A stretch of DNA of 64,000 nucleotides from Marsupella aquatica (Eukaryota > Plantae > Marchantiophyta). The position numbers and the translations under genes were made by a program. The notes under the pieces were generated by a model. It worked only from the letters and a program-made list of their open reading frames with translations. It was not told where the DNA came from and did not search any database. This document shows positions 1,330 to 24,736 of this stretch, piece by piece; positions within the stretch are counted from its first letter, which is position 1; each line of letters opens with the position of its first letter. The stretch spans positions 5,955,241 to 6,019,240 of the forward strand of contig OZ316899.1 in the NCBI GenBank assembly GCA_973895155.1. The letters are read 5' to 3'.

Positions 1330-3860
1330 CCTTCTCTATAAACCATGAGCATTCTCCCTCTCCAAGATCAGTCGGACTTCTCCAATTGTGAGAATTGGTT
1401 GGCTGGTCAAAGTAGATTCCTCAACGTCTAGTTTGAAAACAGTCTGGAAAACTCAATACAAATGTTTGCAAGGCATATATGGATGTTTGCGAGAATGTCG
1501 ACGATAGAAATCCTCACAAGAACAAGTCAGGAAAATACAAATCTGCACAAAGTAACTATTTGACGTCCTTAGATTCTTATGTGTTTGTACTTTGAATTGC
1601 TTCCCCCATGAGTTCCCAATAGAAACATCCCACTGTCCCTGGACGGACATGGTCTCTTTTCTTGCAGATTCAATCCTCTTCATCTGACCATGGGTCAAGG
1701 TCGATCGAGGAACCGTGTTCTTTCCATTCCGACTCCGGAGACGAACAGTGGGTTCCAAAAGATTGACTCTTTCTGGAAATAAGTTTACGTTGATTTGAAG
1801 CTCGAAAAGTGATGGTGGAGGTAGAGGACCGTCTCTTCCTCGGGCTATAGGTATTCCCTGGTCAACAAGATACTTCATCTCAGCTTCCGAAACATTTGTT
1901 CCTTTTATAACAGGAAGAATATCAGGAAAGGAGGGTAGGTTCACTACACCATGGCGGGGACGGCTCCGATAACATGTGTTGTTTGGGCAAAACCATATCA
2001 TTTTGGCTATGGGTTCTCCCCTGAACATGCGTTGTCCTTTGACAACAATGCCGAGGACACCGTTTGATGAGGGGAACCCAACTTTCTTCACTCTATTTCG
2101 ACACTCATCTCTCTTGGAACTACCGCCAAATGACGCGTTGCACTGTGGACCGACCCCAAATTTTGATGTCTGACGCAGATGCCATGAACCCTGCATGACT
2201 TATGTTTCAAGAACTGGAGATTGGAGCGATGTCTGCTGAAGTACAGTGGGAGCGCTTTGTGGGTATTGTGTTGAACGTGATTGATGTTGACCCTGCGGTG
2301 TACTAAAATCATCACATTTTGCATCCCTCGAATCATCACTTCCTGAGAGATTGACAACGGAAATGTCATCAGGTTTTTCTTCCGATACGGAAGCAAACAT
2401 TGTGTGGTGCAGATTTTTACGCTTGAGTGATCTGGTATTCGGCGATGTGATAAGGACTTTATCATGCCGGTGGGAGTCTTGTGGCGAGACAATCCCAGTT
2501 GCAGCTCCTTTCCTCTTGACAGACTTTGTTAGAACATCTCTGTTGAGAGGAACGCTTCTCTCCAAGTCAAACTCAACTGCATTGGAGAGGAGCATGTTCA
2601 TCGCATCCTCGAACAGCTTTGGGGAACCTGCCTGGTCAGCTAAACGGAAAGCCAGTTCTCATATTGCCTCTTTCTCTACTCAATCCTTTCCGATATGCGG
2701 TATATGCTGCAACCTGAGATATAGCTCGATTCTGATCCATTTCACATGCCTCGGAGAGCCCAACTTTTTTTTTCATTACCCATGCTTTCATTCCTGCATG
2801 AACAGACTCTGATCCGGTACAGTTAGGAATCCTAGCGCCTTCTTCAGCACTTTTGTCCTGGAATGACAAAGCATAAACACTAGTAAGAATCCGCAAAACA
2901 TTTCGACAAAACCATCAATATTATTGTGTAATCACATGTTTATGAAAATAAACAGGTCAACATTTGAGAATCAATTACATTATTTGGATTCTTTGGATGG
3001 AATGTTGAGGAATGTCATCTGAAAAATGTCCTTTGTAAATGTACTTCTACAAAGGAATCTGACTTGCATATTACTAGCGCCAGGCGCTATTACTCACCAA
3101 GCAAATAAAATTTCCCCATTGCCTCCAACGCACGACCCACCACAATATCCAACTCTGAAGCATTCAGAGCTTTCCAGGTAAGCAGTTACCCAACTGCCAC
3201 CATAGGTCAATCTCTCTTGAAAGTCGGTAAGCCTCTACAAATGTTGGTGCGTTCCGTAATTTATCCCATAGCATTCGATGTTCCGCCCGCTTCTCTTCCA
3301 ACACCCCTTCAACAGAATGGCGATGAAAAGCTTGGTAAAAATGAAAAGCATCCGTCCTCTCCCGTTCAAGGTTTGGGTGCCCTCCAAAAAAAACATTCCG
3401 GACTGCTAACCATCTGGCTTGGGCATTGTCTGCCATGAAGCCATGAATGTTGGATTATCTAACCCATTCTCTTTGGAAACCTCAATCATTAATCTCCAAG
3501 CCTTCTCGAACGACGCCGTGTCCTCAGCTTTTAGCTTGCAAGTAAATATTGTACACAATGCGCGGTAATTGTGATCGTAAACGTGTGCGCTGAAAGTCAC
3601 CCAATCCTTGGTCATTCATTTCATGACATCGAAGCTTACCCAAGCACCTTCAAGCATCCCTCCAGGTTGCATTTGCCGCAAAAGATCCACCCCAAACCCA
3701 TGGCCTTTGGAAGTCATCTTAAATATGTGAGGTCTGTCTTCTTGAGATCCTTGACCTAGAAGGATGTACCTTTGTAGAAAAGGCATGTTGATATTCTTTT
3801 GATATCGAACAAGAAAATCCAACTCTCCACGGCCTTTCTGGTCCTGCCTAACACTCCTCC
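1330..3860 (-). pseudogene. MULE (MuDRA-like) DDE transposase with C-terminal SWIM finger; 5' part deleted; intron 2858-3097
   Basis: ORF pieces carry WVSFDVM (D1), FMA/DNAQA (D2), DAFH, GSESVHA (E) and TCSCEDF...PCKHLY (SWIM). Colinear with 59060-61479. The GT-AG intron is at the same position as in the second copy. Several stops and frameshifts. Confidence 0.85.
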
Positions 3861-4555
3861 AAGTTTGCCAGGTAGGCCCTTACCTTCTTCCTATCATGGT
3901 ACCGTGCTTGAGACATTGAATTGGAAATTTTATCTGCAAGCCACTGTTCATCAATCTTTGCTCCATTTCGAAATGAATCTTTGATTTGACTCATTACTTT
4001 CCTCTGGTCTGCCTTGCTGAGTTTCCCCCACTCAACTCCTCGTGCAAAATTGGAGCGCACCATAAGCCTGATAGTGCTCTTTGCCCCGGTGTAGGCCAGT
4101 TCAGTAGGAATGCCTTCAATCAAGGCAATCATAGGCAGCTTCTTCATCTCTTCCTCCTTCTTTCGCTGCTCCTCCCGCTGTGCTCTTATCTCATCTCGTT
4201 CCTCTCTCCTCCTCTTCTTTTCTAGGGCAGCAGGTGAGACTACTCCTGCCTTGGCCCTCTCCTCCTTCTTACGCTTCTTCTCTCTTGCCTTCTGTTGAGC
4301 TGCACTCCTTTGCTCCTCCTACCTTGCAATGTTCCCTGCAGCTACTCTCATTTGCAAGGCTTGCCCTAGGATTGCACTCAAAGAAGCAATCCCTGCTGGT
4401 GTAGTCAAATCTAAGCGGCTCAACTGTGCTACATTGAGGTGCTCAGCCATCAAATCGGTCCATCGATTCCTCTCCTGCTCCCCATTGCCTTCATTCCCAT
4501 TGCCACTATCACTCACCCCTGCCCCAACACCTCCATTTGCTCCACTGGAATCCAT
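3848..4555 (-). pseudogene. CACTA accessory (TnpA-like) ORF, 5' portion; one in-frame stop; truncated
   Basis: ORFs 4319-4573 and 3848-4147 are in the same frame across a TAG. K/R/E-rich coil, then EWGKLSKADQRKVMSQIKDSF...EQWLADKISNSMSQARY, resembling the Ptta/En/Spm TnpA N-terminal helices. Transcribed divergently from tnpD. Confidence 0.55.
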
Positions 4556-5910
4556 AGCTAAGCCACCCCCCAAGCGCGCGCGAGCTCCCTTCTCCCTCCC
4601 TGCGCTTGAAATTTGTCAAATGCCGTTGAGTACGCCGCGGCCGAGTGCTAAAGTACAAGCGGGAAAGACTTGCAAAGCAACCCGTTTCGCAATTTGCGAT
4701 CCTTCTCATTTCGCATGTAGTTTCTCAATTTTGCGAAACCATTGCGACGTGAAAGGTTCGCAACACCTTCGCTCTCTCGCAGAAATGCTCTCGGACTCTG
4801 TTTTTCTGAAGGTCGTGCGAAAGCATATGCTTCGCAAAATCCAATTCTAATTTGTGATGGTATTTGCGAAGGAAGTGGCTTCGCAAGACATTGGCAACTC
4901 GTCGTGGGGGGAATGTTGGTTTCATTTGAAAGGGTTTTTTTCAAAGGTAAAGTGGACCCCTCTATACTCATATTTGGAATGCTTTTTGGCCATGGACCCC
5001 TCTATACTCATATTTGGAATGCTTTTCGGCCATGTTTTGGGTGTTAGATAATACTTGAAGGCAGGTTTGAAGGGTTACTTACTCGGTTACTTAGGCAGAT
5101 TTCAGGTTAATGGGTTATGTATGGTGTCGGTTTAGGCTAAGGTTTGGGTTTACATTAGTTTAGAAGAAATAAAAAAGGTGTGGGATTTGGTTTACAAGAA
5201 ATAAGTAAGGTTTGGGTTTAGGGTTTTAGGGTTTGGGGTTTTTAAATAGAAAGGTCTCTAGGGTTGAAGAAAGGTTTGGTTTTATGTGTAAGTCAGATTT
5301 AGGTTTAATAGGTAGGATGCGGTTTGGGGTTGAAGGTTTGGATAAGACAAAGCAAGGTTTCATGAGATTTATATTGCAGCCTTTTGGGTTTAAGAGAGGT
5401 TCATTGGATTTATGAATCAAAAAGGGATTGGCATGGGTTTTGCTAACAAAGGAGGGGAATATATGATAGCTTGCAGGGTGCGGCACTTTTTGATGATTTG
5501 ATACTAATGCATATGCATTGTGAGAGCCCGGGCATCTGAAAGGTAAACATTGCATGACCGGCTCAAGTGTTCCTTTCATGTACTTAACACTTTTGGTTGC
5601 CACTATGTATAAAGGGGACATGTATATAGGGTTTTTTGTTCTTGTCTGGTCCAGATTATTGTGCTTACATATACATGGAATGCTTGCAGCTTTTCCCTCA
5701 TACTTTCAGATTGGGTTCATTAATTATCTTAGAGCCACAAGACCTATTGGCACTGCTGAGCCCGGGTCTCATAAAGGTACCTTTTACATTGCTATGGTCA
5801 TTTTGGTTTGGGTTTCTTGTCATCATTATTTGGGAACTTTGATTTATATCATTTTGTGGTATGTTTTGGTCATAACATGCCCATTTTAATTATATCTTGT
5901 TACAGGGGAT

Positions 5911-6144
5911 ATGTCTTCATCTTCTGAAATCTCCACCACAGACTCGTCCTCCTCTGATGAAGATACACCACCTCCACCTCAACATCACACGACCGCACCT
6001 CCTCCTCGCGGTCCACCCCGTCAACTTTGTGAATGTTCCAGATGTGTGGGTCAGGTTTCCCAAAAATCTTACATATGTGCCCAACATATTGAGAGATATG
6101 GGCGTTGTGGACGTCATACGGCAGGGGCTTCTTCATCTCATATG
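5911..6144 (+). CDS. Exon 1 of the CACTA C1 gene(s): transposase-associated Cys/His domain
   Basis: ATG at 5911. LCECSRC...ICAQHIERYG resembles the CxCxxC...H..G transposase-associated domain of TnpD. Strong donor ATG|GTAAGT after 6144 (phase 0). Confidence 0.75.
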
Positions 6145-6247
6145 GTAAGTGTTATGCCTTAGTTTTCCTACCCTATTCCCATTACTCAATGGTTGAAGGT
6201 TTTTAATTTCACACCTACTTTTGTTTGTTTTGGTTTCGGTGGAATAG

Positions 6248-7062
6248 GTATCCAATAGGCCTAGATCTGCGGCACAAGCACCCTATGTCCCATCACAAGG
6301 TGTTCTAGATGCTATAGGCAATGCATTCTCACAAGCCTTGGGTCTAGCGGCAAGGCCTACCAGTCCTAGGGAAGTTGGGGTTGAGGCTATTGTCCCAAGA
6401 GGGAGAAAGCGTTCCAAGAGGCGGGCCCGAGGGGATACTGATTTGTACAAGGCAGTGGTTATGGGTAGGTGGGGTGATTGTGAGTTCACTGGCAGATGTG
6501 TCCCTATCATCAAGGACTGGGATCCTGAGACTCTTGGTTTGCCACAACAGCTTTCCTATGGTGAGGAGGTAGAGGTTTGGGGTAGACGTTGGGTTATCAA
6601 ACCTTCCACACTTGGGGTAGACATGGCTATGGAGTTTTTGCCTGTGAGGACATCATTGTGGACGCCGAGAGTGGTAGAGGTGGACGCGGCCGAGAGGGGC
6701 CTACTTTGTTTCCTTATGGTGGACCCATCTACAAGAGAAGACATTGGAACATGATCCTTGCACAACACCCTGAGTGGAAAACTTATGCATTGGACATGGA
6801 TACTTTTGATGGAAACACTAGAAGGTATAGTGAGCAGCGTGTCATAGATGGGGACCCCATACGGACTGGGAATATTGCTGGTTTCATAAACAGTACCGTG
6901 GGGACTCGCCCTAAGCGTAGGCAAAATTGTGAGTGGGTCTTCATTGAGGGTCCTCCGCCAACACCTTATGGCCAGACATATCATCATGACCATTGCCTAG
7001 TTGTAGCGATGAGGACCATTAACTCAGGGGATGAGTTATTTACTCACTATGAGTGGGATTAG
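6248..7062 (+). CDS. SET-domain protein exon (putative lysine methyltransferase) with one 1-nt frameshift at about 6614-6617
   Basis: Acceptor AATAG| at 6247 is in frame with ORF 6338. SET motifs in order: VIKPSTLG/RHGYGVFA, LFPYGG, YALDM, VIDG...GNIAGFINS, QNCEWV, VVAMRTINSGDELFTHY. Basic NLS-like RGRKRSKRRAR. Confidence 0.85.
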
Positions 7063-7238
7063 GGTTAAGTTAAGGGTCATAGGTGGTATGTTGCATATCA
7101 AATGACACTACATATGGCCTTTGGCCATGTTTTGTATTTGCACCACAACCAATATTATTTCATTTTTGCACACCCCTAGCCCATTTTTGTGTGTGTTCTC
7201 TTTGCAATATAACTTTCAATTGTTTGCTTTGTTTTTAG

Positions 7239-10200
7239 AATGTGCGACCCTCTCCAAATATGTTACCACGGAGATTGAGAGCAACATATCGAGAAATGGG
7301 TATGTCAGAAGAAGGACATGGATCAGAGTCACACTCCTCATCAAGTGCTAGTGGAAGCAGTAACCCTGATGAAGAGGTACCTCGGACGGATGAACAAGTA
7401 ACTGATGACCAGGATAGAGCCATGGATGACTTTATGGTTGATTGGTTTGGTGCCGACAACCCTGGTGATGACCTTCCCAATGAAGGGCAGGTGCCCCCCA
7501 ATGATCCACGCCCAAGACATACCCCTGAGGGACAACGCCAATGGGAAGAAGCAGAGGAACATGCCCGAACACCTATCTATGAGGGTGCTCGTTTGAGTCG
7601 TCTTTCAGCCATCTTGGGGTTGATGAACTTACAGGCCAAACACAAGGCAAGCAATGCCTTGTTATCTGATATGTTTGCACTTTGCCATGACCTTATGTTA
7701 CCCACTGAGAATGTGTTGCCAGCAACTTGGAAGGAGGCAAAGAGTGTTCTCTCATCTATTGGCATGGAATATCATATTGTTCATGCATGTGTGAATGATT
7801 GCATGTTATTTCATGGGGCCAATGCAAACATGACACAATGTACAACATGTGATGAGCCTCGCTATGACCCCAACATGCTAACAAAGAAGGTACCAAGGAA
7901 GGCTGTTCGTTGGTTTCCCATCATTCCTCGGTTGTTGCACATGTATCGGTGTTCTGACTTGGCGGAGTTGATGGTATGGCATAAGACTCATCGATCAGAG
8001 TCTGGTGTCATGCGGTTGCCACTTGACTCCCCTGCTCACAAACATATTGAGGCAACATGGCCAGACTTTGCACATGATCCTCGCCATGTGAGGCTAGGAT
8101 TGGCATCTGATGGAGTTAGCCCTCATTCACTTGGAGGAAATGGGCAACCTACATCAGTTTGGCCTGTGGTTGTCATGAATTATAACCTCCCACCATGGCT
8201 ATCCATGAAGAAGGGGTTCCTTTTATTGTCTTTGATTATCCTAGGTCCAAAACAGGTGAAGAACTTTGACACTTACTTGGCACTATTGGTTGGAGAACTT
8301 CAAAAATTATGGGATGGAGTGTGGGCATATGATGGCAGGAAAATTACAGGAGGTTTTCCACGTGTCTTTCAATTGAGAGGGATCATTTGTTGGACAATGC
8401 ATGACTATCCTGGTAAGATGACTTCCATGCCATTTGCAACCCTTCGATAATGTGTAGTTCCTATTGTTGTTTCTCATGTGACAACCCTAACATAAAGTTT
8501 GCATGGTTTGATTTCTTCTGTGTAAGCAGGGTTTGGTTTTGTCTCTGGATTGCAAACTCAGGGGTACAAAGCTTGCTCTACTTGTGGCCCAAGCTTAGAG
8601 GACATGGCCACATATTGTTCATGGATTAGAAAGATTGTTTATATTGGGCATACAAAGTTTCTTCCCATGGGGCATGAGATGAGGTTTGACCCACTTCTAT
8701 TCTCCTTCTTTGACATGCCATTTGGTGATGAGCGTGAAATTCCTGATGCAACAAGTTTTGCACATTGGAAGTCACTAGCTAATAGGGTGGCAGACCCAAA
8801 TGATTCCTTCACCTTTGATAGGACAGGTTTGACCAGGTGGAGTATACTAGCCACTTTGCCCTATTGGTCTGAGTTGAAGATCCGCCATCTCTTAGACCCC
8901 ATGCACATAGAGGGAAATGTGGGGAAGGCTTTGATAAAATATTTTTATGGGGAGAAGGACACTAATTTTAGGGAGGCATGCGAGGAGATGGAAATGCATC
9001 CAGATGTTTGGGTGACAATTGATCCTATCACAGGTGTGGAGAATCGTCCTTCTGCTCCTTGGGTGTTGAGTGTTGGCCAAAGACGTGAATTTAAGAACCG
9101 TATAGGAGAGATGCGGTTTCCTACAGGCTATGGTGCCAACCTTCGGAAAGCTTTTGGGATGGAGGACAATCACAAGTGGCCATGATATCTGAAGACACAT
9201 GACTATCATCGCCTATTGTAGCATATATTGCCAGTGGCAATTATAGGTATAGGGAGCGAAGAAGTGCAAGATGTCATCTGGTCATTGGGTCGTTTGTTGA
9301 GATGGATATGCTCAAAGGAGATATATATAGAAGAGATCCCTGGGATGGAGGTATTGGCAGCTGAGGTGGTATGCAAGTTGGAGAAAGCCCTTCCTCCTTC
9401 CTTCTTTGATTGTCAGGTTCATTTACTTGTGCATCTTGTGCGGGAGGTTGCCATTGCTGGTCCAGTGCATTGTAGATGGATGTATTGGCTTGAGCGTTAC
9501 ATGGCGGTGTTGAAGGCTTATGTACGTAACCGTGCACGGGTGGAGGAAAGCATAGCTACAGGATACTTGGCAGCAGAGAGTATGTTTTATTGTAGTAACA
9601 TCTTGGCCACCATTGATCTTACTTGTCCACGTACTTGGATGGAGGAAAGAGAAGAGGAGGAGGACCATTTAACAGGTGCCACAAAAACACGCATGTTGAC
9701 ATCAACAGAGTGGTCACAGTTGACAACATTTATGTTGAGTAATAGTAATATCATGGAGAAATGGAGAGAGCTTTATGAGAATGCCAAGAGAACAAGTCAA
9801 AGAGCAAGAATTTATCCTAAGATGCATGAGTATATGAAGCAAAAGTTGCTTGAGTTGGATGACATGGTGACCCAAGGAGGAGATGTGTCCCACTTTCCTA
9901 CCATCACAGATGACGTTCGGACCATTGTTCATGGCCCTTTGAGAGTGGTGACATCCAAGACGGCTATGTGGACACAAGGGAGACACTTCAGGTCCACTAG
10001 TACCTAACCTTTCTTCCTCCATTAATTCATGTAGACCTTATTTTGATTAGTTATTTCTATTGTTTAAAAACTTTCTATTATCATTAATGACATCCATAAC
10101 TGTAATGTTGGCTTCTATATTTATGCCATAGGCCATGTGGGTTTTTGCTATTTAGGGATGGGTGTCATATTTTGATGATTATTACATTAATGGTATCTTT

Positions 10201-10720
10201 TGTGTAATAAAAATTTGTGGGTTTTGTTAATTTTAGGGTTTCTTCCCTTGATGAGAAGAGGGGTCGTACTTTTGATTGTGGAGTTCAAGGGGAATTTTCT
10301 TTAGACTCCAGAAGCAGCCGCCATGACAGGAACATTGTTAGAGATGTTGTGCCACACTATGGGAAGATAGAGGAGATCTTGGTGGTATCATATGACAACC
10401 ATTCAAAGTTTGAGGAATATGTCTTCAAGTGCAAGTGGTTCAAAGTGAACCTTGTTGGTCAAAATTGCACTGTACTTCAAGATGAGAGTGGGTTTACACG
10501 GTTGAAGACAAGTGCCACTAGTGTTCAAGCATCTCATTGGCAAATATCAGAACCATTTGCTTTCCCATCACACTTGGAGCAATGTTTCTACATTCCATAC
10601 CCCTTAGACACCGAGTGGTCAATTGTCATCACCTATGTGCCACGTTCTCGTTCCATCTGAGAAGCCAGATGTTATTGTATCAGACCTAGATGACCTTGAG
10701 GCCGATGAGGACCAAGTGCG
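7239..10720 (+). pseudogene. tnpD: CACTA TnpD (Tnp2) transposase, exons 7239-8412, 8530-9991 and 10237-~10720
   Basis: HACVNDCML, RWFPIIPRL, RLGLASDG, SVWPV, YNLPPW, TMHDYPG, LDPMHIEGN, KTHDYH, PPSFFDCQVHLLVHL, GPVHCRWMYWLERYM, FKCKWF. GT-AG introns keep the frame. In-frame stops at 9183 and 9219. Confidence 0.95.
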
Positions 10721-10979
10721 AGGGACATATTTATATGCACTTGGGTCCAGCCTAGACATTTGTTCATGTTATATTTGATTTGTTCATGTTTGGTGATATA
10801 AAAAAAAGTATTGTCTATATTTATATTTGTCATTCACTTTTGAATGAGTCATACTCATGACATGTATTGTATTGTTTTATTGTGATCACTTGTGAATTTT
10901 ACATGCAACTTTCTATCTAACCTCTGTTGCTCAATATAACTTTATTTCCTACTTATTCCATAATTTTCATTGTCACCCT

Positions 10980-11165
10980 CATGTTTCCCTCCTCCGTGGT
11001 ACGTCTGTCCCTCCTCCTCCCTTCCTCTTTCTCCTTTCTTCCTCTTTCTCCTCCCTCCTTCCTCTTCCATTGTACTCCCTCCCTTTTCCATCCTTCATTG
11101 TACCGGCCTCCTCCATCCTCCCTTCCTCTTCCCTCCTGCCCCATCCATATATTGGACCATCCACC
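10980..11165. repeat. Pyrimidine-rich (CT/CCT) low-complexity tract
   Basis: Runs of cctc/cttc; the ORFs called here are compositional artefacts. Confidence 0.7.
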
Positions 11166-13052
11166 CTCTTCATTGTCTCACCTCACAACAATCTGAATTT
11201 TTAGTTTGCGAACAATTTGCGAAGCTCACAAAATCTCACCGGACTCACAATTTCTATGAAGCTTTTCGTTTCTCAATATTTTTATACTATACTATTCGCA
11301 ACCTTGTGATGCAAATTCAATCACAAATTTCATATTCTCACCGTTTCGCAAATCTTCCATCCTCTGACATTCTTAAACTTGTCAAACAAATACTATCGCA
11401 AAACAATTTCAATCCAACCTTCTTCGCAAATATTTACATCAGTTAGTTTCGGCATCGGCGAGTGATTTTGGCATCTTCAGAAGGCGCCTTTCCATTCGGC
11501 GTGTTTTGGTAAAACTTGCAAAATAATTTACTTTGCAACGTATTAGCGATATAATGCGCTTCAAGTATTATCTTTGCGATAGAGATAGAATGGCAAATTG
11601 CGATGCGGGTTGATTCGCAAATTATGCCAAGCGCCGCGCATTGGAAATCCAAGAGCGTCGATAAAAATACCTTCACAAAAGTGTCAAATATGTTGTAGTG
11701 ATCAATTTTTGCAGCCATTTTCCTCTCTCTTGAATTCAATCTGAAACTGCATCATTCTCTATTGGATTCGAATGGCAGCAGGTCTATTCCAATCAACAGC
11801 ATCAAGGCAGCCAGCCAATTCTGATCAACATCCCATGCCTAAAGCTATAGCAGCTCAACTCAATTTCATAGCTGCCTCTTGATCCCAATTCGAAGCAAGC
11901 TTCTCATGTATTGACCCTTATGGTGTTCCTGACCTCGTGCTTGAGTAGCCCCGGCCTCGTGCTTAAGTCGTGGTCGCCGCCGACGCGGTTGACACTTAGA
12001 AAAATTTTGGATTTTTTTGTTGGGAAAATAGTATTTCCAGGCCATTTTCGACCGCCCCCAAAAATCACACATGAGTCCAAAATGACTTCTGAGTATATAT
12101 ACATATTCTCTGGACATAGAACTATGTCCTGGTTTACTAATATCTAAACAAAACCTTATCACCGATTTTCTAAAATTAGGTAAAGTGGGTCAATTATTAT
12201 GTTTTCCAAAATTCTTCTCACCTTTGAGATGCTCCCAAAAAGTAACCAAAGATACCCAGCTTCTACCACAAGTTTCCAAGGATAAAATTGACCATATTTA
12301 ACCCACTTCCAAACTTGGAACTCCTAAATTTACTCATCAGCTATTTTTCCCGGGACCCGCTATTTTGTTAATTTAAGTCCCACCAAAACACAAGGAAACC
12401 CTAGGTTGAGACCCCACTTGACATCTAACTTTTTAGGGGTGCTCTAGGGACCTCCTAGCATCTATGGGAAAAATATGAACCAAAACTAAGACTTCAAGTG
12501 TCGGGTTGTTTCCCCGGCTCGGAATAGTCACCTAGTCTAAATAAGGACGGAACGTTGTATGCCTCATCATAAAGACCTTTCTTATCCCTTGTCACTTGCT
12601 TAGAACTCATTAACCTTCCATTCCACTATCTTTCCTATTCTACCTACTTAAGTTCCTAAAACCTAGTTACTCCGATAGCACTTAAAACATCTTTCTTACT
12701 ATTCCTTGTTCAAAAAGCAAAAAAATGACAAGTTTCTTACATAAACCTATATCGAGCCATTCCACACACAGCGCCCGGCGCTAGCAATAATCGTGGAGAG
12801 TTCCTACCGCTACGAGTTTCTTATATTTACTCCTGTTTGTTTTTTTGGTGTCTTTTAAAAAAACCTCGCCTTCGGCGCTATTTTTTGCAGCGCCAGGTGC
12901 TACCAGAATTTTTTTTCAAAAGTAACTTGTCAGAAAAACATGCAAGAAAGAGCCATCAATTTTCCTGTTACCAATCTTTTTCCCTGTTACCAGTTTCCGT
13001 TATGAATGCGTGTTTCCTGTTTTCCTGCCTTTTATAAACACCTCACCCAGAC

Positions 13053-14350
13053 TAAGCAAGGACTTAATCTGGGCCCCCTTGTTGTGGTCCAACTTCTCAT
13101 AAATGAGTCCTTGGTCTTGAGTCAACGGACCCAAACCATCGTGCCCCTTGCACCAACCCGCGGCCCCCCCCATACAAAGTCGCACTTGCTCACCAACCTA
13201 ACCGCTACTCAACGATCCTCACTGCCTGCATAAGCAGCCAAGCACCTTGGTAAGTAACCCTTCAGGATCTAGAACTTGCCAAGTCTAGCATCCTAACTCA
13301 TGCTCAATAGACGTTGGTAAATAGGCCAGCCATAGGTCCTCCCGATGCCATAAGTCGGAACCACAACCCATGCCCACTGTTTGTCCAGAACAGCCCCTTC
13401 CTTGGGCGCGGCCTGGGTTCCCCCTTGTTCCTATCCATCACCAACTGACCGCCCTGACCCAGGATATGCTCATGGCCCAAATAGCATAGCTTATCCTAAA
13501 GCTTGTCCCAACGCGTCGGGACCAGAATGACCCTCACTCTAGCAATCAACTCCCGGTTCTTTCCCCACTAATGGTCCAGGGGCTAAGCATCCTTGAAACT
13601 CTACCTCCATGCCTACTTGGCCTTGCCTCCCCAACGCAAGCTCCCTTGGGAAACTGAACGCGGCTTGGCTGTTATTCGGCAGGATTTGGCAGTGAGCGAG
13701 CTAACACCCGCAAACCTCAAGAACTTATGGCATCCTTATACCTAGCTGATCTCAGGGGGACATAGCCCTCCTTGACATCTTTCCAACGCACCCAAGAAGT
13801 CCTCCAATGGACTTCCCATTGGGAAGATATTGTCATTTCTGTTTGACGCTTCCCCTTAGTGTCGCGTCCGCCGCGGCTCACAACTTTGGCTCGCCTTTGG
13901 CCCCCAAGGAGACACCACTCCCTTCATATATGCTTCTGGAGACCTGCCACCCACGGACCAAATTTGGTCCCTAAACTTTTGGCCTCCACCCCAGAACCTA
14001 TCGCGCATATTGGGCGCGCCATTAACTGACAATGCCCATAACTTTCTCGTTAGGCGTCCGCAAGCAGAGTGCCTTAGCCCGTTGTGATCAGGCTGACCCA
14101 GTGCTCATGCCTAGGCTGTCAGGTCTCATCGTCGCTTGGGGTCCCCGATCGGCCAAACCCGGATCAGGCCATAACTCACCCTGTCGTGAGGACTTAAAGT
14201 TATGGGCTCCTCGAGCAAACTGCGCGTTTTTGGCTGCGATTGGGACAGGCGACAAGCACTTTTCGGAGCAAACTCTCACTCCTTTATATTTTTTCTTTTC
14301 TCACAAAGGTTACAATAGGTGCCCTTGAGTAAGCTTGCCCGCAAGAGTCT
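13053..14350 (-). mobile_element. G1 retrotransposon leader and degenerate gag 5' region
   Basis: Continuation of 1-655 across the MULE-1 TSD. Same GC-richer composition; no long intact ORF. Confidence 0.55.
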
Positions 14351-14386
14351 GGTAGCTGGCCCTACGGCGGGCCGCTACCTCTAACT

Positions 14387-16729
14387 TGTCGAGTAGAACT
14401 CCTCGAGTGACTAACTACTCAAAATCTGAAGGAAAAACTATCCTCCTTAGCTCACAAAACCAAAACTCGACTAGCTACTTCACTAGTCTAAAACAGCTCA
14501 CACGGAACTCGGGCCTAGACCAACAAGGCTCCAAACTCGAGAAATCCTGGTCTAGATCAACGAGACTCATCAATGAGCGTTGTCATGAGGTTTCCATCCT
14601 AAAGGAGGAATCCTCATGTTTTGTGAAGGAAGTTGAAACCAATTTTGCTTCTAACTTGGGCAAGTTGACTTGACTTGAGCTAACTTGACCAAGGTGAAGG
14701 AGGAAGTAAAGTTATGAGGGTCAAGGTAGGGATGAGGTCGAGCCTATCCACCCTTGTTACTATTGTGGGGTATGTTTTTCATTTGTGACCAGCGATTAAG
14801 TTATCATTTGGCGGATCGGCGGAATGGAGGTTGCTTGCTCGACAAGCAAGGTATTTAGGGTTTTGGCAACATGGTGACCAGGTTCATTGAATACATGGAG
14901 GAGATGACCAGGTTCAAGGCATGTAAGAGGGTTTGGACCAAGTGCATCAGTTTTGTGAGATTTGGACCAGATTCAGATTTTTATGTTAAATGGACCAGAT
15001 TCAATGTATCTACTTCAACGGTGGATCTTGGTTTTGGTTAATGGATGGTTTGGATTGAAGGTGGAGATGTGAGTTAGGGCTTGGTGGAGGTCGTGGCTTT
15101 TTCAAAAAGGTCGAAGCTCTTTTGGTTTGCAAGTTACTAAGGAGGGGTTTTTTGGCTCATTTTTTGCCGTTTGATCTAATTGGTGTGAGATCGAGGACTG
15201 TGATTCAACGAGGATTAAAACCATAAGTGGAGGAGCTTGTGGGTGCCCTGGGCCTTCCCACGTGGATACTAAAGGAGGAAGTTTGAGTGGCCAAGGGTTC
15301 GGAGGTTAGATGCTGCTGAAGTGCTGCCGTTTTGCCGTTTTGGAGTGTTAAGTCCCATTTTTAGTTGAAGGAGCGAACCTCTTGAGGGGAGCTCGAGCAT
15401 GAGGCATGAGTGAAGGGGGAGCCTTGGCCATGGCCTTAGGATTTTGAGGGTAGGAGATGTAGAGGCAATTTTGTGAAGAGATAGATGGAGTAGAAGCTTT
15501 GAATGTGAAGAGATTGAGTTTTGTGACGGTTTTTCTAGGGATTTGGAGAGAGGTTTCGAATGTAGGAGAGGTTGACTTGAAGCCTTAGGAAGGAGGTAGG
15601 ATGTGAGTAGGAAGTATAAGGAGCTTGCATGAGAGATTGCCCACAAGAAGGCATACTCGAATGTAGGTTTGTTGCTTCAAGTTTTGAGGAGAATGGACTT
15701 GTAGGAGATTTTCAAAAGCTTAGAGGAGATGAGACCTAATCTTGTTGAAGCTTGGGAGTCTTGCATTAGAGATGGCTCACTAAGAAGGCCTACTCTCTTG
15801 TAAACTCCTTGACTTGAAGCTTCGAAAGTAGATTTGGTTGATAGAAGGAAGTATGAGAGAAGGAGACTAGGGTTTTGAAGCTTGGATAGGCTATGGAGGG
15901 ATTTTGAATGCTTGGTTGATGATTAGACTTGGTGATGATTCATTTTTGCTAGGAGGGTCTTGCTTGTGACCCATGTTTTTACTTGGAGGCCATGATGCTA
16001 CATGTGCCTTCTTGCTATGCATTTAGAGGAGAGGTATCCTCGTTTTTGAGATGTGTGTTGATGCCTTGCTTTGGCTATGAGTGATGGAATGGTTAGAATG
16101 AATGTCTTCATGCCATTTTCGAATGTTGTTGTGAGCTTGAAGGTGTTTTTGAAAGTAGATGGGTTGAATGAAGGTACTTTTGAAAGTAGTTATTATGCAT
16201 GAGGGAAGTTGCAAGAGTAAAGAGTGAAGGCATTTTCGATTGATGAAATGGGTTGTTTGTGGATTATACTTGGTGGTTCTACTAGAGGAAAGGACTAAGG
16301 TCAATTCCATGTTTGTTAAGGAGTTTGTTGACCAACCCTAGGTCACTTTTCGAAAGTAGTTTCCCATGTTTTGAAAGTTGGATGTTTGAATGGTCCATAG
16401 AGATGCCTTGCATACCTTTGGATGTCCCACTTGTCTTAGCCACAACCAAGAGTGACCCTTAACTTGACCACATTGAATGTACACTTGAACTTGTGTACCT
16501 TAGAAGGTTGCAAGGGATTGTGTGCAATCAAGTGTTGGAAAAGGAATGGTGACCAATTGAATGTTGGGCTTAGACTTATGAGGATTACATTGGGAAGCTT
16601 GAACTAGTTATTTTGATTGTGATTGGATATGAGTATGTAAATGGCTTGAGTTTCGAAAGCATGCATGCTTGCTTGCTTGTGATAATGTGGATGAAAGGAA
16701 GTGCTTAGGGTCTACTTTATCTTGTTTGC
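14387..16729 (-). mobile_element. Probable long 5' LTR of G1 (boundaries tentative)
   Basis: Non-coding and strand-skewed, with an internal ~170-bp imperfect duplication (about 15530-15900). Lies upstream of gag, with candidate TG..CA ends. No partner LTR in the window. Confidence 0.4.
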
Positions 16730-16814
16730 AACCGTTTCCTATCTCAAGCAGCCATACACCCTGCGTGTCCCTTGAGCCTCTTTTCCCACCTCTTTGCTTA
16801 TCCTCAGGACAGCG

Positions 16815-18860
16815 CTCTTGGTTGGGGAACTCCATAAATTATGGGGGGGTGTATGGGCATATGATGGTCGGACAACTACAGGAGGGTTACCACGTGTCTT
16901 CCAATTGAAGGGAATCATTATGTGGACCATGCATGACTATCCAGGTGAGTGGTATGGATTTGTATTTTTTTCATGTATTGGAGATCAAGTTTGTTTGGAA
17001 GGAAGTCCCTCTTTAATTCTATGTACATGAACTTTTCAATTCCTTTGACTCTAATTGAGAATGTTATTTTGTGAGCAGGGTTTGGGTTTGTTTCTGGGTT
17101 CCAAACTCAAAGGTACAAGGCATGCTCCACTTGTGGTCCAAGCCTTCACGATATTGCCAAGTACTCAAAATGGCTGCACAAGATAACCTACCTTGGTCAT
17201 ACCAAGTTTCTTCCACTTGGGCATCACATGAGGTCTGACCCCCTTTTGTTTTCAGACTTTGACATGATCAATGGTGATCAGCGTGAGATACCTGACCGCA
17301 CAACATTTTCGTATTGGAAATCCATAGTTGATAGGGTGGCAGACCCTGAAGATGCCATGGGATTTGATGGTAGTGGATTGACAAGGTGGAGTATACTGGC
17401 CACTTTGCCCTATTGGCCTGAGTTGAAGATTCATCACTTGTTAGACCCCATGCATATAGAGGGAAATATTGGGAAGGCTTTGATCAAGCACTTTTATGGG
17501 GAAAAGAACATTAATTTTAGGGAGGCATGCCAGGATCTAGAACGACATCCAGATGTATGGATAACAGTTGATGAATCCACAGGGATGGAACATCGTCGTT
17601 TACTACAACATATACTTCCTGTGGCAATCATAGGTTTGGGGAGTGAAGAAGTGCAAGACGCCCTTTGGTCACTGGGCACTTTGTTGAGATGGATATGCTC
17701 AAAGGAAATATATGAAGAAGAGATACCACGGATGGAGGTATTGCAGCAGAGGTGGTATGCAAGTTGGAGAAGGCCCTCCCTCCTTCCTTCTTTGATTGTC
17801 AGGTGCATCTTCTCGTTCATCTTGTGAGGGAGGTTGCCATTGCCGGTCCGGTGCATTGTAGGTGGATGTATTGGCTGGAAAGGTATATGGCCGTGTTAAA
17901 GGCTTATATATGGAACCGTGCACGAGTGGAAGGGAGCATGGCAACTGGATACTTGGCAGCTGAGAGTATGTTTTATTGTAGTAACATCTTAGCTACCATT
18001 GATCCTAGTTGTCCACGCACTTGGATGGAAGAGAGGGAAGTGGAGGAGGACCGTTTAACAGGTGCAAAAAAAACACGCTTACTAACCGCAGTGGAGTTGA
18101 CACAGGTTAGTACTTTCATGTTGAGTAACAGCACTGTGATGGAAGATTGGAGAGAGTTTTATGAGGATGCAAAGAGGGAGAGTCGTCGCCCAAGGATCTT
18201 TCCAAAGTTCCTTGAGTATATGAAGGAGAAAGTACTTCAGTTGGATGCTATGGTGGCCCAAGGTGAGAATGTATCACATTTTCCAGATATGACTCCTGAG
18301 GTTTGAACAATTGTTCATGGTCCTTTAAGACTTGTTCAGACCAGAACAGCAATGTGGACACAAGGGAGGCATTTCAGGATTTCTGACCTTGATGAGAAGA
18401 GGGGAAGAACTTTTGATTGTGGAGTTCAAGGGCAGTTCATGCAAGATTCACAAAGTAGCCGTCATGACACTAATGTGATCAGAGATGTGGTGCCTCACTA
18501 TGGGAAGATTGAGGAGATCTTGATCATATCCTATGATGCCGATTCCAAATTTGAAGAGTATGTCTTCAAGTGTAAGTGGTTCAAAATTCACCTGGTTGGT
18601 GATAATCGCACGGTACTTCTTGATGAGTGTGGGTTTACTCAATTGAAGACATCAGCAACTAGCTTTTAACCATCTCATTGGCAAACATCTGAACCATTTA
18701 CATTCCCAAGTCACCTTGAGCAGTGTTTCTATATTCCGTACCCACCAGACCCAGAGTGGTTAGTTGTTATACCGTATGTGCCACGGTCCCGTTCCATTAT
18801 CTCGGAAAAACCTGACGTTATTATTGTGTCAAATGGAGGAGAGGATGAGGACCAGGTTTG
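16815..18860 (+). pseudogene. tnpD: CACTA TnpD transposase, 3' two-thirds
   Basis: WTMHDYPG, LDPMHIEGN, PPSFFDCQVHLLVHL, RWMYWLERYM, FKCKWF. Internal deletion near 17590, plus frameshifts and stops. Confidence 0.92.
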
Positions 18861-19615
18861 ATGCACTAGTAGTAAAACTTGTTGTGGGCCCAGAATTTGA
18901 CCCTAAACTAACTATCATGGTTTTATTTATATTAACATATTAATTTTCTTCTTTTGTTTTACAAACACTTAATTGGACTTTGAAATTTCATCTCACTGTT
19001 ATATATGCAACCCTAGCCGTTTCCAAATCTATCCTCATGCATGCCACCTTTTTGAAAACCCTAGCTGTAACCTAAACACATGCATTCTCCATCTTGTAAA
19101 GAAACTCTCTCAAACATTTCCATTCTACAAACTTTTCAAACAACTCTCTTTGCAAAACATTTTCAAGCTTGTCAAGAAGCAACTTCTGAACACTTTGTGA
19201 ATAACACACCATCGGTAATTGTGATGCCAATGGGTTCTCAACTTTGCGAATCAACTGGCTTCGGTAACTTGCGACTATTTATACTTCACAATATTGTGCG
19301 AAGCTAATAGGTTCACAAGTATATTTGAGTACATTATTATCGCTAAATTATGAAACAAAAGAGATCCAAATGCAGTCGCGATGGTCGCGGATCCACAAAT
19401 ACTTTGCGAGATGAATAGTATCTAAAAGAGTTGCGAATTCAATTTGATCTCAAACAAATTGCAAGGTATTTAGCTTCGCAACACTACGTTGCGAACCTTT
19501 GAGTATGGTTTATTGTGATGCGTGTTTGATCACAAAATATCTGAAGTCGATGACATGGCAAGACCATCCCGGCGTAAAAAAAAAGCTTTGCAAAAGGGGC
19601 CAATATGTAGTAGTG
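16815..19615 (+). mobile_element. CACTA transposon C2 (relative of C1); right end intact, left half deleted; inserted in the 3' LTR of G2
   Basis: Terminus ...ATATGTAGTAGTG at 19615, followed by AATAGTGCAATCC, which is uninterrupted at 31978 in the other LTR. TTCGCAA subterminal repeats. Confidence 0.85.
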
Positions 19616-20250
19616 AATAGTGCAATCCTTTCGAGCTTCTCCTGTGGGAGTAGACAGTCTCCATACCAGTAGAGTTGACTGAGGTAAGCTGGGAGGTATG
19701 TTGGCTTTCCATTCTGTACAACATTGATTTGACTGAGGATGGTGTGTCTCAGTAACAATCCCCAATTAACTTCAGCAAGTCCTTTCCATGAAGTAACAAA
19801 TGTGTTTGCTAAAGATACAGGTACCATATATGGTCGAGTGGGATGAAAAATTGGTACCCGAAACTCAAGGATGATCTGGAAGGTATAATCAATACATTGA
19901 TTAAGCTTCCATCCAGCTTTTGTATTTCTTGTCCCAGCGAACATTGGATCAGATAAAGTACTCTTTCCAGATTGTAAACCACAGCCTTCTAATGAACAAC
20001 TAAAAGCGTCGGCCACGAACTCTAAGTCCCACTTCTCGGGATCTGCTCGAACAGTCTCATGAAACACTTCTGGAATTTGTGACCCATCAACGAACTCGCG
20101 CAAGTAGGTAGGACACACAGAAGACCACGGAATGGATAGAAGTTTTCCCAGGTGCATAACTTCTAGAGCATCGGTCAATAACATCAAATCCCTCTCGAGT
20201 GCGGGGTACTTCACCGGTATAGCTCTAGGAACAGGGAAGTCGCAACTCAT
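19616..20250 (-). CDS. LTR-borne accessory ORF of G2 (uncharacterised), truncated by C2
   Basis: Open frame MSCDFPVPRAIP...LLSIPW...REF...LEFRVPIFHP...VNWG...YLPAYLSQLY. The same ORF is present in the 5' LTR. Confidence 0.65.
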
Positions 20251-20769
20251 CTCATCCACGCCCACAGCTATGGTTCTTGAAGTTGAGTCACTTACAAAAA
20301 TCTAAGTCGCAAAACGATGACGCGTATTGGCGTGATCGCACATGAGCGTATAAATGCCACAACGCTCAAGCGTCTTTGCGTATGGGCGTGAATGTCGAGG
20401 CCTTTGGTAGCAAACAGGGAAGTGAAAATGTTTGTCGCGAGCAGGTGGTCTAGTGAGTCACTCTGTTACTTCCTCCTCATCGTCGACGGCTACTTTCAGT
20501 TTCCGGCAGGGTGGGCTGCATATACGCGTCTGAGCACATTAGCGCATAAGTGCCTACGCGTTGGAGCGTCTTAGCGGATTAGCTACTACTATGACTCCGA
20601 TTTGACATGGCTGTAAAAGTAACTAGTTTTAGGAGACTACAGGGATGTACTTGAGGATGGCTTAACTACTCTAATGCTCCTAATTAATATAGATAACATG
20701 AGGCGAATCACTACTTATCTCAAAAAGTTCAAAGTTTTCACATAAATTCTGAATAACTGCTATATCACA
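19616..20769 (-). repeat. G2 3' LTR (truncated by CACTA C2)
   Basis: Starts TGTGA right after PPT+CTA. Near-identical to 31978-32823 apart from 275-bp and 40-bp indels. Confidence 0.85.
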
Positions 20770-20772
20770 TAG

Positions 20773-20782
20773 CCCCTTCTTC
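20773..20782 (-). other. Polypurine tract of G2
   Basis: GAAGAAGGGG followed by CTA|TGTGA, just after the end of integrase. Confidence 0.8.
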
Positions 20783-20807
20783 AAATGGCGATGTGTCCTC
20801 ACAAGCC

Positions 20808-24708: not shown

Positions 24709-24736
24709 AACATTTGGTTTAACCAGCTGACTTACT

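What the first reader, a model, noticed from the sequence alone, without database searches (positions are those of the whole stretch)
6248..7062. CACTA transposon carrying its own SET-domain (methyltransferase-like) gene
Seen in sequence: between tnpD exons 1 and 2 lies an exon with all SET motifs in order (KPSTLG/RHGYGVFA, PYGG, YAL, IDG..GNIAGFINS, NC, AMRTI.SGDELFTHY) and an NLS-like RGRKRSKRRAR. There are no pre- or post-SET cysteines. One missing base in the G-run at about 6614-6617 is the only lesion; there are no stops. Established: SET domains are SAM-dependent lysine methyltransferases; minimal viral vSET methylates H3K27; some plant DNA transposons carry anti-silencing genes (VANC, En/Spm TnpA). 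Inference: this could be an element-encoded chromatin modifier of about 350 aa. The canonical NH motif reads NS, so activity may be altered. I do not know of a described plant CACTA-SET system, but I could not search.
Basis: partly seen in the sequence, partly recalled or inferred. Interest (0 to 1): 0.92.

Follow-up and report, generated by a model that had tools for sequence, protein, structure and literature searches.

The report
Bryophyte CACTA transposon with SET gene
A broken copy of a moss/liverwort cut-and-paste (CACTA) transposon carries, between the first exon and the body of its transposase gene, a conserved exon for a SET-type lysine methyltransferase, so this transposon family seems to bring its own protein or chromatin modifier, whose target is still unknown.

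Summary
Window 6248-7062 (+) is one coding exon read in two frames that meet at the G-run 6614-6617. Its second part passes Pfam's SET threshold. It lies between a Cys/His first exon (5911-6144) and the transposase body (from 7239). Both downstream exons are in frame with exon 1.

The same order, exon 1 - SET - transposase, recurs in every related locus long enough to show it: Sphagnum magellanicum, Calypogeia fissa and peat-bog metagenome contigs. Gene models in Riccia sorocarpa agree.

Between element lineages the SET core has dN/dS of 0.13-0.22, as constrained as the transposase. Within one lineage the copies decay neutrally. An AlphaFold model of an intact relative is a clear SET fold (Z 11-12) with no closest subfamily. 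"INS" in place of "NHS" is conserved across the family, so it is not decay.

This copy is dead: SET frameshift, a stop in a second conserved minus-strand gene, and a missing left end.

No RNA data were found, so shared-exon splicing and enzyme activity are inferred. SET accessory genes are known in HarbingerS, oomycete MuDR, Helitrons and red-algal Plavaka. I found no description for land-plant CACTA elements. This scan had already found the family many times elsewhere in this genome.

The parts
3848..4558 (-). Second gene of the element, divergently oriented. It is a roughly 235-codon ORF with an acidic/Gly N-terminus, a K/E-rich middle and a conserved C-terminal block, broken here by one in-frame TAG. 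The homology to related elements stops near 3869, which is where this copy is truncated on the left.
   Evidence: The minus frame is continuous except for one stop. tblastn finds 57-73% aa identity at the same relative position in L001, L002, L003, L006, L007 and L016. There is no Pfam family. L001 and L003 homology runs about 370 bp further than in the window.
4600..4900 (.). Internal cluster of 8 TTGCGA/TCGCAA motifs between the two divergent genes. This is the same motif as in the subterminal regions; it is a candidate protein-binding or promoter region.
   Evidence: Motif counts: 8 in 300 bp against 0.33 per kb in the rest of the window. The same three-cluster layout occurs in L001 and L003. 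Inverted-repeat pairs I1, I15 and I23 link this region to 11311-11620.
5911..6144 (+). Exon 1: 78 codons from the ATG, a Ser/Asp/Pro-rich head followed by the Cys/His motif LCxCxxCxGQ..(10)..C..H..YGR. It ends in phase 0 and is followed by the donor GTAAGT at 6145.
   Evidence: Sequence. The motif and the donor CATRTG|GTRAGTG are conserved in L003, L006, L007, L011 and L016. A weak profile match places it at the position of the PF13963 region of angiosperm CACTA transposases (hhalign E=0.0015, probability 16%).
6248..7062 (+). SET exon with its own stop codon (TAG 7060-7062). It holds a variable linker with a basic NLS-like patch (6398-6430), a structured pre-SET part (about 6455-6600) and the SET core (about 6600-7059). 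A -1 frameshift lies in the G-run 6614-6617.
   Evidence: The acceptor (A/G)ATAG|G is conserved. dN/dS results are.
7063..7238 (+). AT-rich spacer (GC 0.36) between the SET stop and the transposase acceptor. It does not align between lineages and has no conserved splice donor after the stop.
7239..10657 (+). Transposase body in several exons: 7239-8447 (Transposase_21), 8550-9182, 9228-10004 (DUF4218) and 10217-10657 (DUF4216). The acceptor CATAG|AAT is in frame with exon 1.
   Evidence: Pfam E-values of 4.6e-38, 1.1e-33 and 3.1e-8. Relatives are 50-80% identical in bryophytes and 33-44% in angiosperm CACTA transposases.
11150..11700 (.). Right subterminal region with 9 TTGCGA/TCGCAA motifs, and the right terminus. 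Its reverse complement starts CACTACAACATATTTGACAC (11678-11700).
   Evidence: The first 10 bases equal the left terminus of the complete element in L001, which also has a 3-bp target duplication CCA.

Best explanation
Window 3850-11700 is a decayed, left-truncated copy of a roughly 10-kb CACTA/En-Spm transposon family of bryophytes.

Shown: the transposase gene of this family has an extra coding exon, placed after its Cys/His first exon, that encodes a linker, a basic patch and a divergent SET domain ending in its own stop codon. The position of the exon, its reading frame, its flanking splice signals and its SET motifs are kept across lineages whose synonymous sites are near saturation. The SET core is as constrained as the transposase. 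In this copy the SET exon is frameshifted.

Inferred: one promoter and one first exon give two products. Exon 1 joined to the SET exon gives a nuclear Zn-motif-SET protein of about 350 aa. Exon 1 joined directly to the transposase exons gives the transposase. This parallels the TnpA/TnpD pair of maize En/Spm.

Further inferred: the SET protein is an active, or at least SAM-binding, lysine methyltransferase that serves the element. Most likely it methylates a histone or a transposition or silencing factor at or near the element, and the shared Zn module gives both products the same DNA or protein partner. Substrate and effect (anti-silencing or self-restraint) are unknown.
For: - SET identity: Pfam SET in the window piece and in 18 of 19 family members; in P0006 it covers profile positions 1-104 of 105.
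- Fold: AF2 model of P0006 has pLDDT 83 and pTM 0.72. Foldseek finds 290 PDB hits at E<=1e-3, all those listed being SET methyltransferases. VIA gives Z 11-12, rmsd 2.2-3.1 over 118-136 residues.
- Architecture: exon 1, then a roughly 130-bp intron, the SET exon, a 130-230-bp spacer and the transposase, in L001-L010 and L013.
- Genuine CACTA: the L001 element is complete, with CACTAC..GTAGTG ends and a 3-bp TSD.
- Selection: SET core dN/dS is 0.13-0.22 between lineages, with bootstrap 95% upper bounds of 0.22-0.37. The transposase gives 0.125-0.24. Within the Sphagnum clade values are mostly 0.5-1.1.
- Motifs: 26 members sharing 27-78% identity keep GxG, FPYxG, IDGDP, N..AGYINS, PN and GDEL...Y. 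The final Tyr aligns with the catalytic Tyr of EZH1 and MLL1.
- One polypeptide: in the distant lineage L017 the Zn motif and the SET domain lie in one uninterrupted 423-aa ORF.
- Independent gene models: annotations of Calypogeia (P0049) and Sphagnum jensenii (P0307, 343 aa, a cluster of 360 members) join exon 1 to the SET exon.
- Both acceptors are in frame with exon 1, and the splice signals are conserved.
Against: - There is no RNA evidence. No RNA run holds the stretch, and the contigs laid on it show no exon junctions. The gene models cited are predictions.
- In the Sphagnum and Calypogeia lineages the SET exon has its own ATG four codons in. P0018 is annotated as starting there, so a SET protein without exon 1 is possible.
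- The His of the canonical NHS motif is replaced (INS) throughout the family. In SUV39-type enzymes that His is needed for activity (from my own knowledge), so catalysis is not assured.
- The family profile finds no solved SET protein at E<0.01 by sequence, and the fold plateau gives no subfamily and hence no substrate.
- No conserved donor follows the SET stop, so how the SET mRNA ends is unknown.
- This copy cannot make the protein as assembled.
Confidence: 0.7

Rival explanations
1. The SET fold is kept but the protein is not an enzyme. With INS instead of NHS it acts as a binding module, for a lysine or methyl-lysine peptide or for SAM, that tethers the element's machinery to chromatin or titrates a host methyltransferase partner.
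For: The His of NHS is missing in all 26 diverse members, whereas the Ser is invariant. An insertion of about 8 residues separates INS from the PN motif compared with canonical SETs (the canonical spacing is from my own knowledge). Sequence similarity to solved enzymes is very low.
Against: The other SAM-pocket and catalytic motifs (GxG, YxG, the Asn, and the C-terminal Tyr aligned with the catalytic Tyr of EZH1 and MLL1) are invariant or nearly so. That pattern is expected for a working active site. dN in the core (0.10-0.15) is lower than in the transposase.
Confidence: 0.2
2. The exon makes a SET-transposase fusion protein (SETMAR-like) and not a separate product.
For: Two automatic gene models join SET sequence to transposase sequence: P0095 in Riccia (SET plus Transposase_21) and P0306 in Sphagnum jensenii.
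Against: The SET exon ends in a stop codon in all 10 loci examined, TAG, TAA or TGA directly after the last motif. No conserved donor lies before or after that stop. Both fusion models have to drop the conserved C-terminal SET motif or run on past it. Exon 1 already joins the transposase exon in frame without the SET exon.
Confidence: 0.06
3. The exon is an incidental capture of a host SET gene fragment that hitch-hikes without serving the element.
For: CACTA elements are known to capture host gene fragments (from my own knowledge). Copies within one genome evolve nearly neutrally, with dN/dS mostly 0.5-1.1. This copy is broken.
Against: The exon has the same position, frame and splice signals in lineages with dS of 0.5-1.5, and the core has dN/dS of 0.13-0.22. 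An exhaustive search finds no host SET clade; every hit with known context is linked to CACTA. Neutral decay of inserted copies is what any transposon gene shows; the transposase does the same.
Confidence: 0.04

Closest known systems
[quoted passage not shown]
   Same: A DNA transposon carries a SET-domain accessory gene next to its transposase. The presumed role is to manipulate epigenetic marks.
   Different: They belong to other superfamilies (PIF/Harbinger, Mutator, Helitron) and other hosts (oomycetes and others). In them the SET gene is separate, whereas here the SET exon lies inside the transposase transcription unit and can share its first exon. I could not compare sequences because those entries are not in the tools.
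Plavaka accessory gene 2 (PAG2) of the red alga Bostrychia moritziana (bioRxiv 10.1101/2025.02.11.637652)
   Same: The element belongs to the wider EnSpm/CACTA-related group and carries an accessory gene with a SET domain (PF00856).
   Different: [quoted passage not shown] The element here is a classical land-plant-type CACTA (Transposase_21, DUF4218, DUF4216) with a SET-only exon.
Maize En/Spm: TnpA and TnpD made from one transcription unit by alternative splicing
   Same: CACTA termini, a 3-bp target duplication, subterminal repeat motifs, and one promoter and first exon apparently serving both the transposase and a second, smaller nuclear protein.
   Different: TnpA is a DNA-binding protein without a SET domain, and here the alternative splicing is only predicted. 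The comparison with En/Spm rests on my own knowledge and not on a test run here.
SETMAR (primate SET-mariner fusion) and VANC of Arabidopsis VANDAL elements
   Same: Both link a transposon to chromatin or epigenetic control. VANC is an element-encoded anti-silencing factor (cited in PMC12730594).
   Different: SETMAR is a host gene that captured a transposase, which is the reverse situation, and it is a true fusion protein. VANC has no SET domain and acts on DNA methylation.
Solved SET lysine methyltransferases: LegAS4, SET8, SET7/9, MLL1/3, EZH2, ASH1L
   Same: Same fold: VIA Z 10.9-12.0, rmsd 2.2-3.1 over 118-136 residues. LegAS4 has the highest identity, 26-31%.
   Different: No subfamily stands out. 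There are no AWS, CXC, pre-SET or post-SET Zn clusters. NHS is replaced by INS, and an insertion lies between INS and PN. The family profile matches these proteins only at E of 0.03-0.5.

Membership tests
SET-domain lysine methyltransferases (PF00856) | Profile match above the curated threshold | tested here: met
   Window piece 28.5 bits against a cut-off of 22.4, E=2.1e-6. 18 of 19 family members match, best E=7.5e-8.
SET-domain lysine methyltransferases (PF00856) | SET fold | tested here: met
   AF2 model of the intact relative P0006 (pLDDT 83). VIA Z 11-12 to many solved SET enzymes, with 359 chains at Z>=8. The window's own broken protein was not folded.
SET-domain lysine methyltransferases (PF00856) | SAM-pocket and catalytic motifs: GxG, YxG, NH(S), ELxxxY with the catalytic Tyr | tested here: inconclusive
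   GxG, FPYxG and GDEL...Y are invariant or nearly so, and the Tyr aligns with that of EZH1 and MLL1. However, NHS reads INS in the whole family, so the His is absent.
SET-domain lysine methyltransferases (PF00856) | SAM-dependent methyl transfer to lysine | not testable with these tools
   Needs a biochemical assay.
CACTA / En-Spm DNA transposons | CACTA termini in inverted orientation and a 3-bp target-site duplication | tested here: met
   The window has only the right terminus (11678-11700); the left end is missing. The complete relative in L001 (6256-16662) has CACTAC..GTAGTG ends and the duplication CCA.
CACTA / En-Spm DNA transposons | Transposase of the Tnp2 type (PF02992) with DUF4218 and DUF4216 | tested here: met
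   Angiosperm CACTA transposases are 33-44% identical.
CACTA / En-Spm DNA transposons | Clusters of short subterminal repeat motifs | tested here: met
   TTGCGA/TCGCAA clusters lie at the right end of the window element and at both ends of the L001 element, with an additional internal cluster.
En/Spm-type two-product gene (alternative splicing from a shared first exon) | Transcripts that join exon 1 either to the accessory exon or to the transposase exons | tested here: inconclusive
   Both joins are in frame and the splice signals are conserved. Gene models show both joins, and L017 has the Zn motif and SET in one ORF. No RNA run or spliced contig was found.
Transposase-associated domain (PF13963) as the identity of exon 1 | Profile match to PF13963 or to proteins that carry it | tested here: inconclusive
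   No Pfam hit at E<=1. hhalign against 8 carriers aligns the CxCxxC...H motif at the same N-terminal position, with E=0.0015 but probability only 16%.

The most novel reading that the evidence does not exclude
The Zn-motif-SET protein is a transposon-encoded histone 'writer'. The Zn module it shares with the transposase takes it to the element's own TTGCGA-type repeat clusters. There it lays down a lysine methyl mark that counteracts host silencing, which in bryophytes uses H3K9 and H3K27 methylation, or that licenses transposition. The splice choice between the SET exon and the transposase exons would set the balance between chromatin preparation and excision. That would be the first histone-modifying anti-silencing system encoded by a land-plant DNA transposon.
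Probability: 0.2. Interest if true: 0.85.

Novelty: new variant of a known kind. Interest (0 to 1): 0.6.

Why it matters
Transposons that carry their own epigenetic tools are rare and informative: VANC in Arabidopsis, TET/JBP in fungal elements, and SET genes in HarbingerS and Plavaka. A SET gene embedded in the transposase transcription unit of a classical plant CACTA element, kept under selection across mosses and liverworts, would give a tractable system. Sphagnum, Marchantia-type liverworts and Physcomitrium can be transformed. The questions it opens are how a DNA transposon manipulates chromatin or regulates its own transposase, and how bryophyte silencing is evaded.

There is also a practical point for annotation. 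Hundreds of gene models labelled "SET domain-containing protein" in Sphagnum, Calypogeia and Riccia genomes are transposon genes, not host chromatin regulators.

Tried and rejected
- RNA evidence. The look-up of sequencing runs found no RNA run that holds the stretch. Contigs of four runs laid on 5800-11750 showed no exon junctions. A protein search across the exon 1/SET junction returned only genome-derived gene models and ORFs that read from exon 1 into the intron.
- Left terminus. The reverse complement of the right end and shorter CACTACAACA patterns found no left TIR in the window. The match at 1942 lies inside an unrelated ORF and was rejected.
- Sequence link to solved SET proteins. Family profiles gave nothing below E=0.01.
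- Origin of the SET domain. The exhaustive profile search returned only this family. Atlas, PDB and viral fold searches give a flat plateau of SET proteins with no closest group, so no donor lineage can be named.
- Minus-strand gene. No Pfam family was found, and the Atlas was busy twice.
- The ORF at 10970-11443 is not conserved in related loci and was dropped.
- Steps left out. I did not build or search a frame-repaired or spliced (exon 1 + SET) protein of this copy; pieces were searched apart, and naturally intact relatives were used for alignment and folding. In the dN/dS script the two window pieces were joined with an unknown codon at the break.

Full report
**The observation**

From the acceptor AG at 6246-6247, frame 2 is open from 6248 and encodes a linker, the basic patch RGRKRSKRRAR (6398-6430) and a stretch ending ...WGRRWVIKPSTLG. 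From the G-run 6614-6617 onward, frame 1 encodes RHGYGVFA ... PYGG ... YAL ... IDGDPIRTGNIAGFINS ... NC ... AMRTINSGDELFTHYEWD and stops at 7060-7062.

The second piece passes Pfam's curated SET threshold: PF00856, 28.5 bits against 22.4, E=2.1e-6. The ORF downstream of 7239 is a Tnp2-type transposase (PF02992, E=4.6e-38), followed by DUF4218 and DUF4216 pieces.

Exon 1 (5911-6144) ends in phase 0 before GTAAGT. Both 6248 and 7239 follow an AG and are in frame with it.

**The lesion**

Naturally intact relatives read KPSTLGERHGYGVFA through the break. Contigs from four public runs carry one more G behind 6613, which restores the frame as LGGRHG. In the best holder this form makes up about half of the summed depth.

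The depths run into the thousands, so this is a high-copy family. These contigs therefore show that intact sister copies exist. They do not show whether this locus is truly frameshifted or is a homopolymer error. None of the runs is on record as RNA, and no exon-exon joints were seen.

**The element**

The right end is ...AAAGTGTCAAATATGTTGTAGTG at 11678-11700. No left terminus is present.

In Sphagnum magellanicum, the related element in L001 is complete. It spans 6256-16662 with CACTACAACA...GGAGTAGTG ends and the 3-bp duplication CCA on both sides, so the family is a genuine CACTA transposon.

Complete relatives have three clusters of the motif TTGCGA/TCGCAA: one at each end and one internal, upstream of exon 1. 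The window has the internal cluster (8 motifs in 4600-4900) and the right one (9 in 11150-11700), against 0.33 per kb elsewhere.

Upstream of the internal cluster, on the minus strand (4558-3848), lies a second ORF that is conserved in six related loci at 57-73% aa identity. It has no Pfam family and one in-frame stop here. Homology to L001 and L003 ends near 3869, about 370 bp short of where theirs continues. The copy has therefore lost roughly its left 2 kb.

This copy thus has three lesions: the SET frameshift, a stop in the minus-strand gene, and the missing left end.

**Is the SET exon a fixed part of the element?**

A word-indexed protein search with the SET piece found 52 relatives, nearly all from Sphagnum species or peat metagenomes, and one from the liverwort Calypogeia fissa.

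I fetched 17 loci and ran tblastn with the window's pieces. Every locus that reaches far enough shows the same order: exon 1, an intron of about 130 bp, the SET exon, a spacer of 130-230 bp, then the transposase. The SET-to-transposase link is seen in 11 loci. Two decayed fragments (L012, L014) have no transposase downstream.

Splice signals are conserved:
- exon 1 donor CATRTG|GTRAGTG
- SET acceptor (A/G)ATAG|G
- transposase acceptor CATAG|AAT

Exons have GC of 0.45-0.53 and the two non-coding stretches 0.36. The latter do not align between lineages, whereas the SET core is the best-conserved DNA of the whole element: 81% between the window and Calypogeia.

**Selection**

Nei-Gojobori estimates give the following picture.

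| Comparison | SET core dN/dS | Bootstrap 95% interval |
|---|---|---|
| Window vs Sphagnum clade | 0.13 | 0.07-0.22 |
| Window vs Calypogeia | 0.22 | 0.12-0.36 |
| Calypogeia vs Sphagnum clade | 0.21 | 0.12-0.37 |

The linker gives about 0.5-0.6 and the transposase 0.125-0.24. Core dN (0.10-0.15) is below that of the transposase (0.15-0.21). Within the Sphagnum clade both genes mostly give 0.5-1.1, the usual neutral decay of inserted copies.

One oddity is unexplained: dS of the SET core is about half that of the transposase for the same pairs.

**Range and separateness of the family**

An exhaustive profile search of 1.84 billion representatives gave only 107 hits at E<=1e-3. The named ones come from Sphagnum, Calypogeia fissa and Riccia sorocarpa. 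No ordinary host SET family appears.

Several Riccia models carry the Zn motif upstream of the SET domain (P0058) or join SET to Transposase_21 (P0095).

In 26 members sharing 27-78% identity, the invariant or nearly invariant positions are the SET motifs: GxG, FPYxG, IDGDP, N..AGYINS, PN and GDEL...Y. The Ser of INS is invariant. NS in place of NH is therefore a family trait and not decay of this copy.

**Fold**

I did not fold the broken window protein. The intact relative P0006 (79% identical over the SET piece) modelled with pLDDT 83 and pTM 0.72; residues 61-260 are mostly above 90, including the conserved pre-SET strands.

Foldseek's listed hits are SET lysine methyltransferases. LegAS4 is first, at E=2.3e-7 and 26% identity. 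VIA gives a flat plateau of Z 10.9-12.0 for Set1, EZH2, SET7/9, SET8, ASH1L, MLL, NSD2 and LegAS4. Viral SETs are no closer, and the Atlas search agrees.

By sequence, the family profile reaches solved SET enzymes only at E of 0.03-0.5, through the C-terminal motif, where the conserved Tyr aligns with the catalytic Tyr of EZH1 and MLL1. The fold is certain; the subfamily, and hence the substrate, is not.

**One gene, two products?**

Support for a Zn-SET protein:
- both joins are in frame;
- the window lineage has no ATG near the start of the SET exon;
- the Calypogeia model P0049 and the Sphagnum jensenii model P0307 (343 aa, in a cluster of 360 members) join exon 1 to the SET exon;
- in the distant lineage L017 the motif LCDCNECKGQ...HIERYGRY and the SET domain lie in one uninterrupted 423-aa ORF.

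Evidence against a SET-transposase fusion:
- the exon ends in a stop in all ten loci checked;
- no conserved donor flanks that stop.

Because no donor follows the stop, the SET exon looks like an alternative terminal exon and not a cassette exon.

Exon 1 aligns weakly with the PF13963 region at the same N-terminal position of angiosperm CACTA transposases (hhalign E=0.0015, probability 16%). Pfam itself does not match it.

All of this is prediction, because no transcript was found.

**Comparison with what is known**

The paper library holds no description of a SET gene in a land-plant CACTA element or in Sphagnum or liverwort transposons. It does record SET accessory genes in:
- HarbingerS and oomycete MuDR (Kojima and Jurka 2014, cited in PMC12730594);
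- Helitrons, and PAG2 of red-algal Plavaka elements (bioRxiv 10.1101/2025.02.11.637652).

The kind is therefore known. What is new is the host group, the superfamily branch, and the embedding of the SET exon in the transposase transcription unit with a shared first exon.

This scan has already reported the same family many times in this genome. My tests here were run independently and agree with those notes.

**Verdict**

This copy is a dead, truncated member. The interest lies in the family. Enzyme activity, substrate and splicing remain to be shown.

Noticed in passing
window 3848-4558 (-); L003 7375-8400 (-); L001 about 8088-8710 (-): A second, divergently oriented gene is conserved in the CACTA family (K/E-rich middle, conserved C-terminal block, no Pfam family). 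It could be the element's DNA-binding, TnpA-like partner. In the window it has one in-frame stop and is cut off by the left truncation.
   Followed up: partly
window 4600-4900 and 11150-11700; L001 6296-6737, 8866-9108, 16134-16635: The 6-mer TTGCGA/TCGCAA is clustered about 50-fold over background at both subterminal regions and also in an internal block between the two divergent genes, which suggests one binding protein serves both the ends and the promoter.
   Followed up: partly
SET core against transposase in window, L003, L004 and L010: Synonymous divergence of the SET core is about half that of the transposase for the same element pairs (0.46 against 1.02; 0.86 against 1.04-1.49). Possible causes are synonymous constraint in an alternatively used exon, exchange of the SET module between lineages, or estimator noise.
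   Followed up: no
L017 (Logan contig of SRR33386717) 433-1704: A distant lineage (37% aa identity in SET) has the Zn motif and the SET domain in one intron-less 423-aa ORF, followed about 130 bp later by an acidic ORF that resembles the start of the transposase exon. The host organism is unknown.
   Followed up: partly
window 16812-18798 (+): A second CACTA transposase fragment, 69-86% aa identical to the first. It lacks the 5' part, so it cannot show whether it had a SET exon.
   Followed up: no
window 1453-3822 (-): A run of minus-strand ORFs abuts the truncated left edge of the CACTA copy. To my eye they carry SWIM-like and MULE-like motifs (CSCEDF...CKH), but Pfam gave no hit, so this identity is unverified.
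   Followed up: partly
window 19510-26854 (-), 36641-37708 (+), 49456-53159 (+): LTR-retrotransposon genes: gag, zf-CCHC, RNase H and integrase H2C2 on the minus strand; another zf-CCHC gag; and an integrase (H2C2 plus rve) on the plus strand. The window appears to consist of nested transposons with no obvious host gene.
   Followed up: no
public annotations: P0307, P0302, P0018, P0058, P0062, P0095: Many models in Sphagnum, Calypogeia and Riccia genome annotations labelled 'SET domain-containing protein' or 'hypothetical protein' are this transposon gene, sometimes mis-joined to transposase exons. They could inflate counts of host SET genes.
   Followed up: partly
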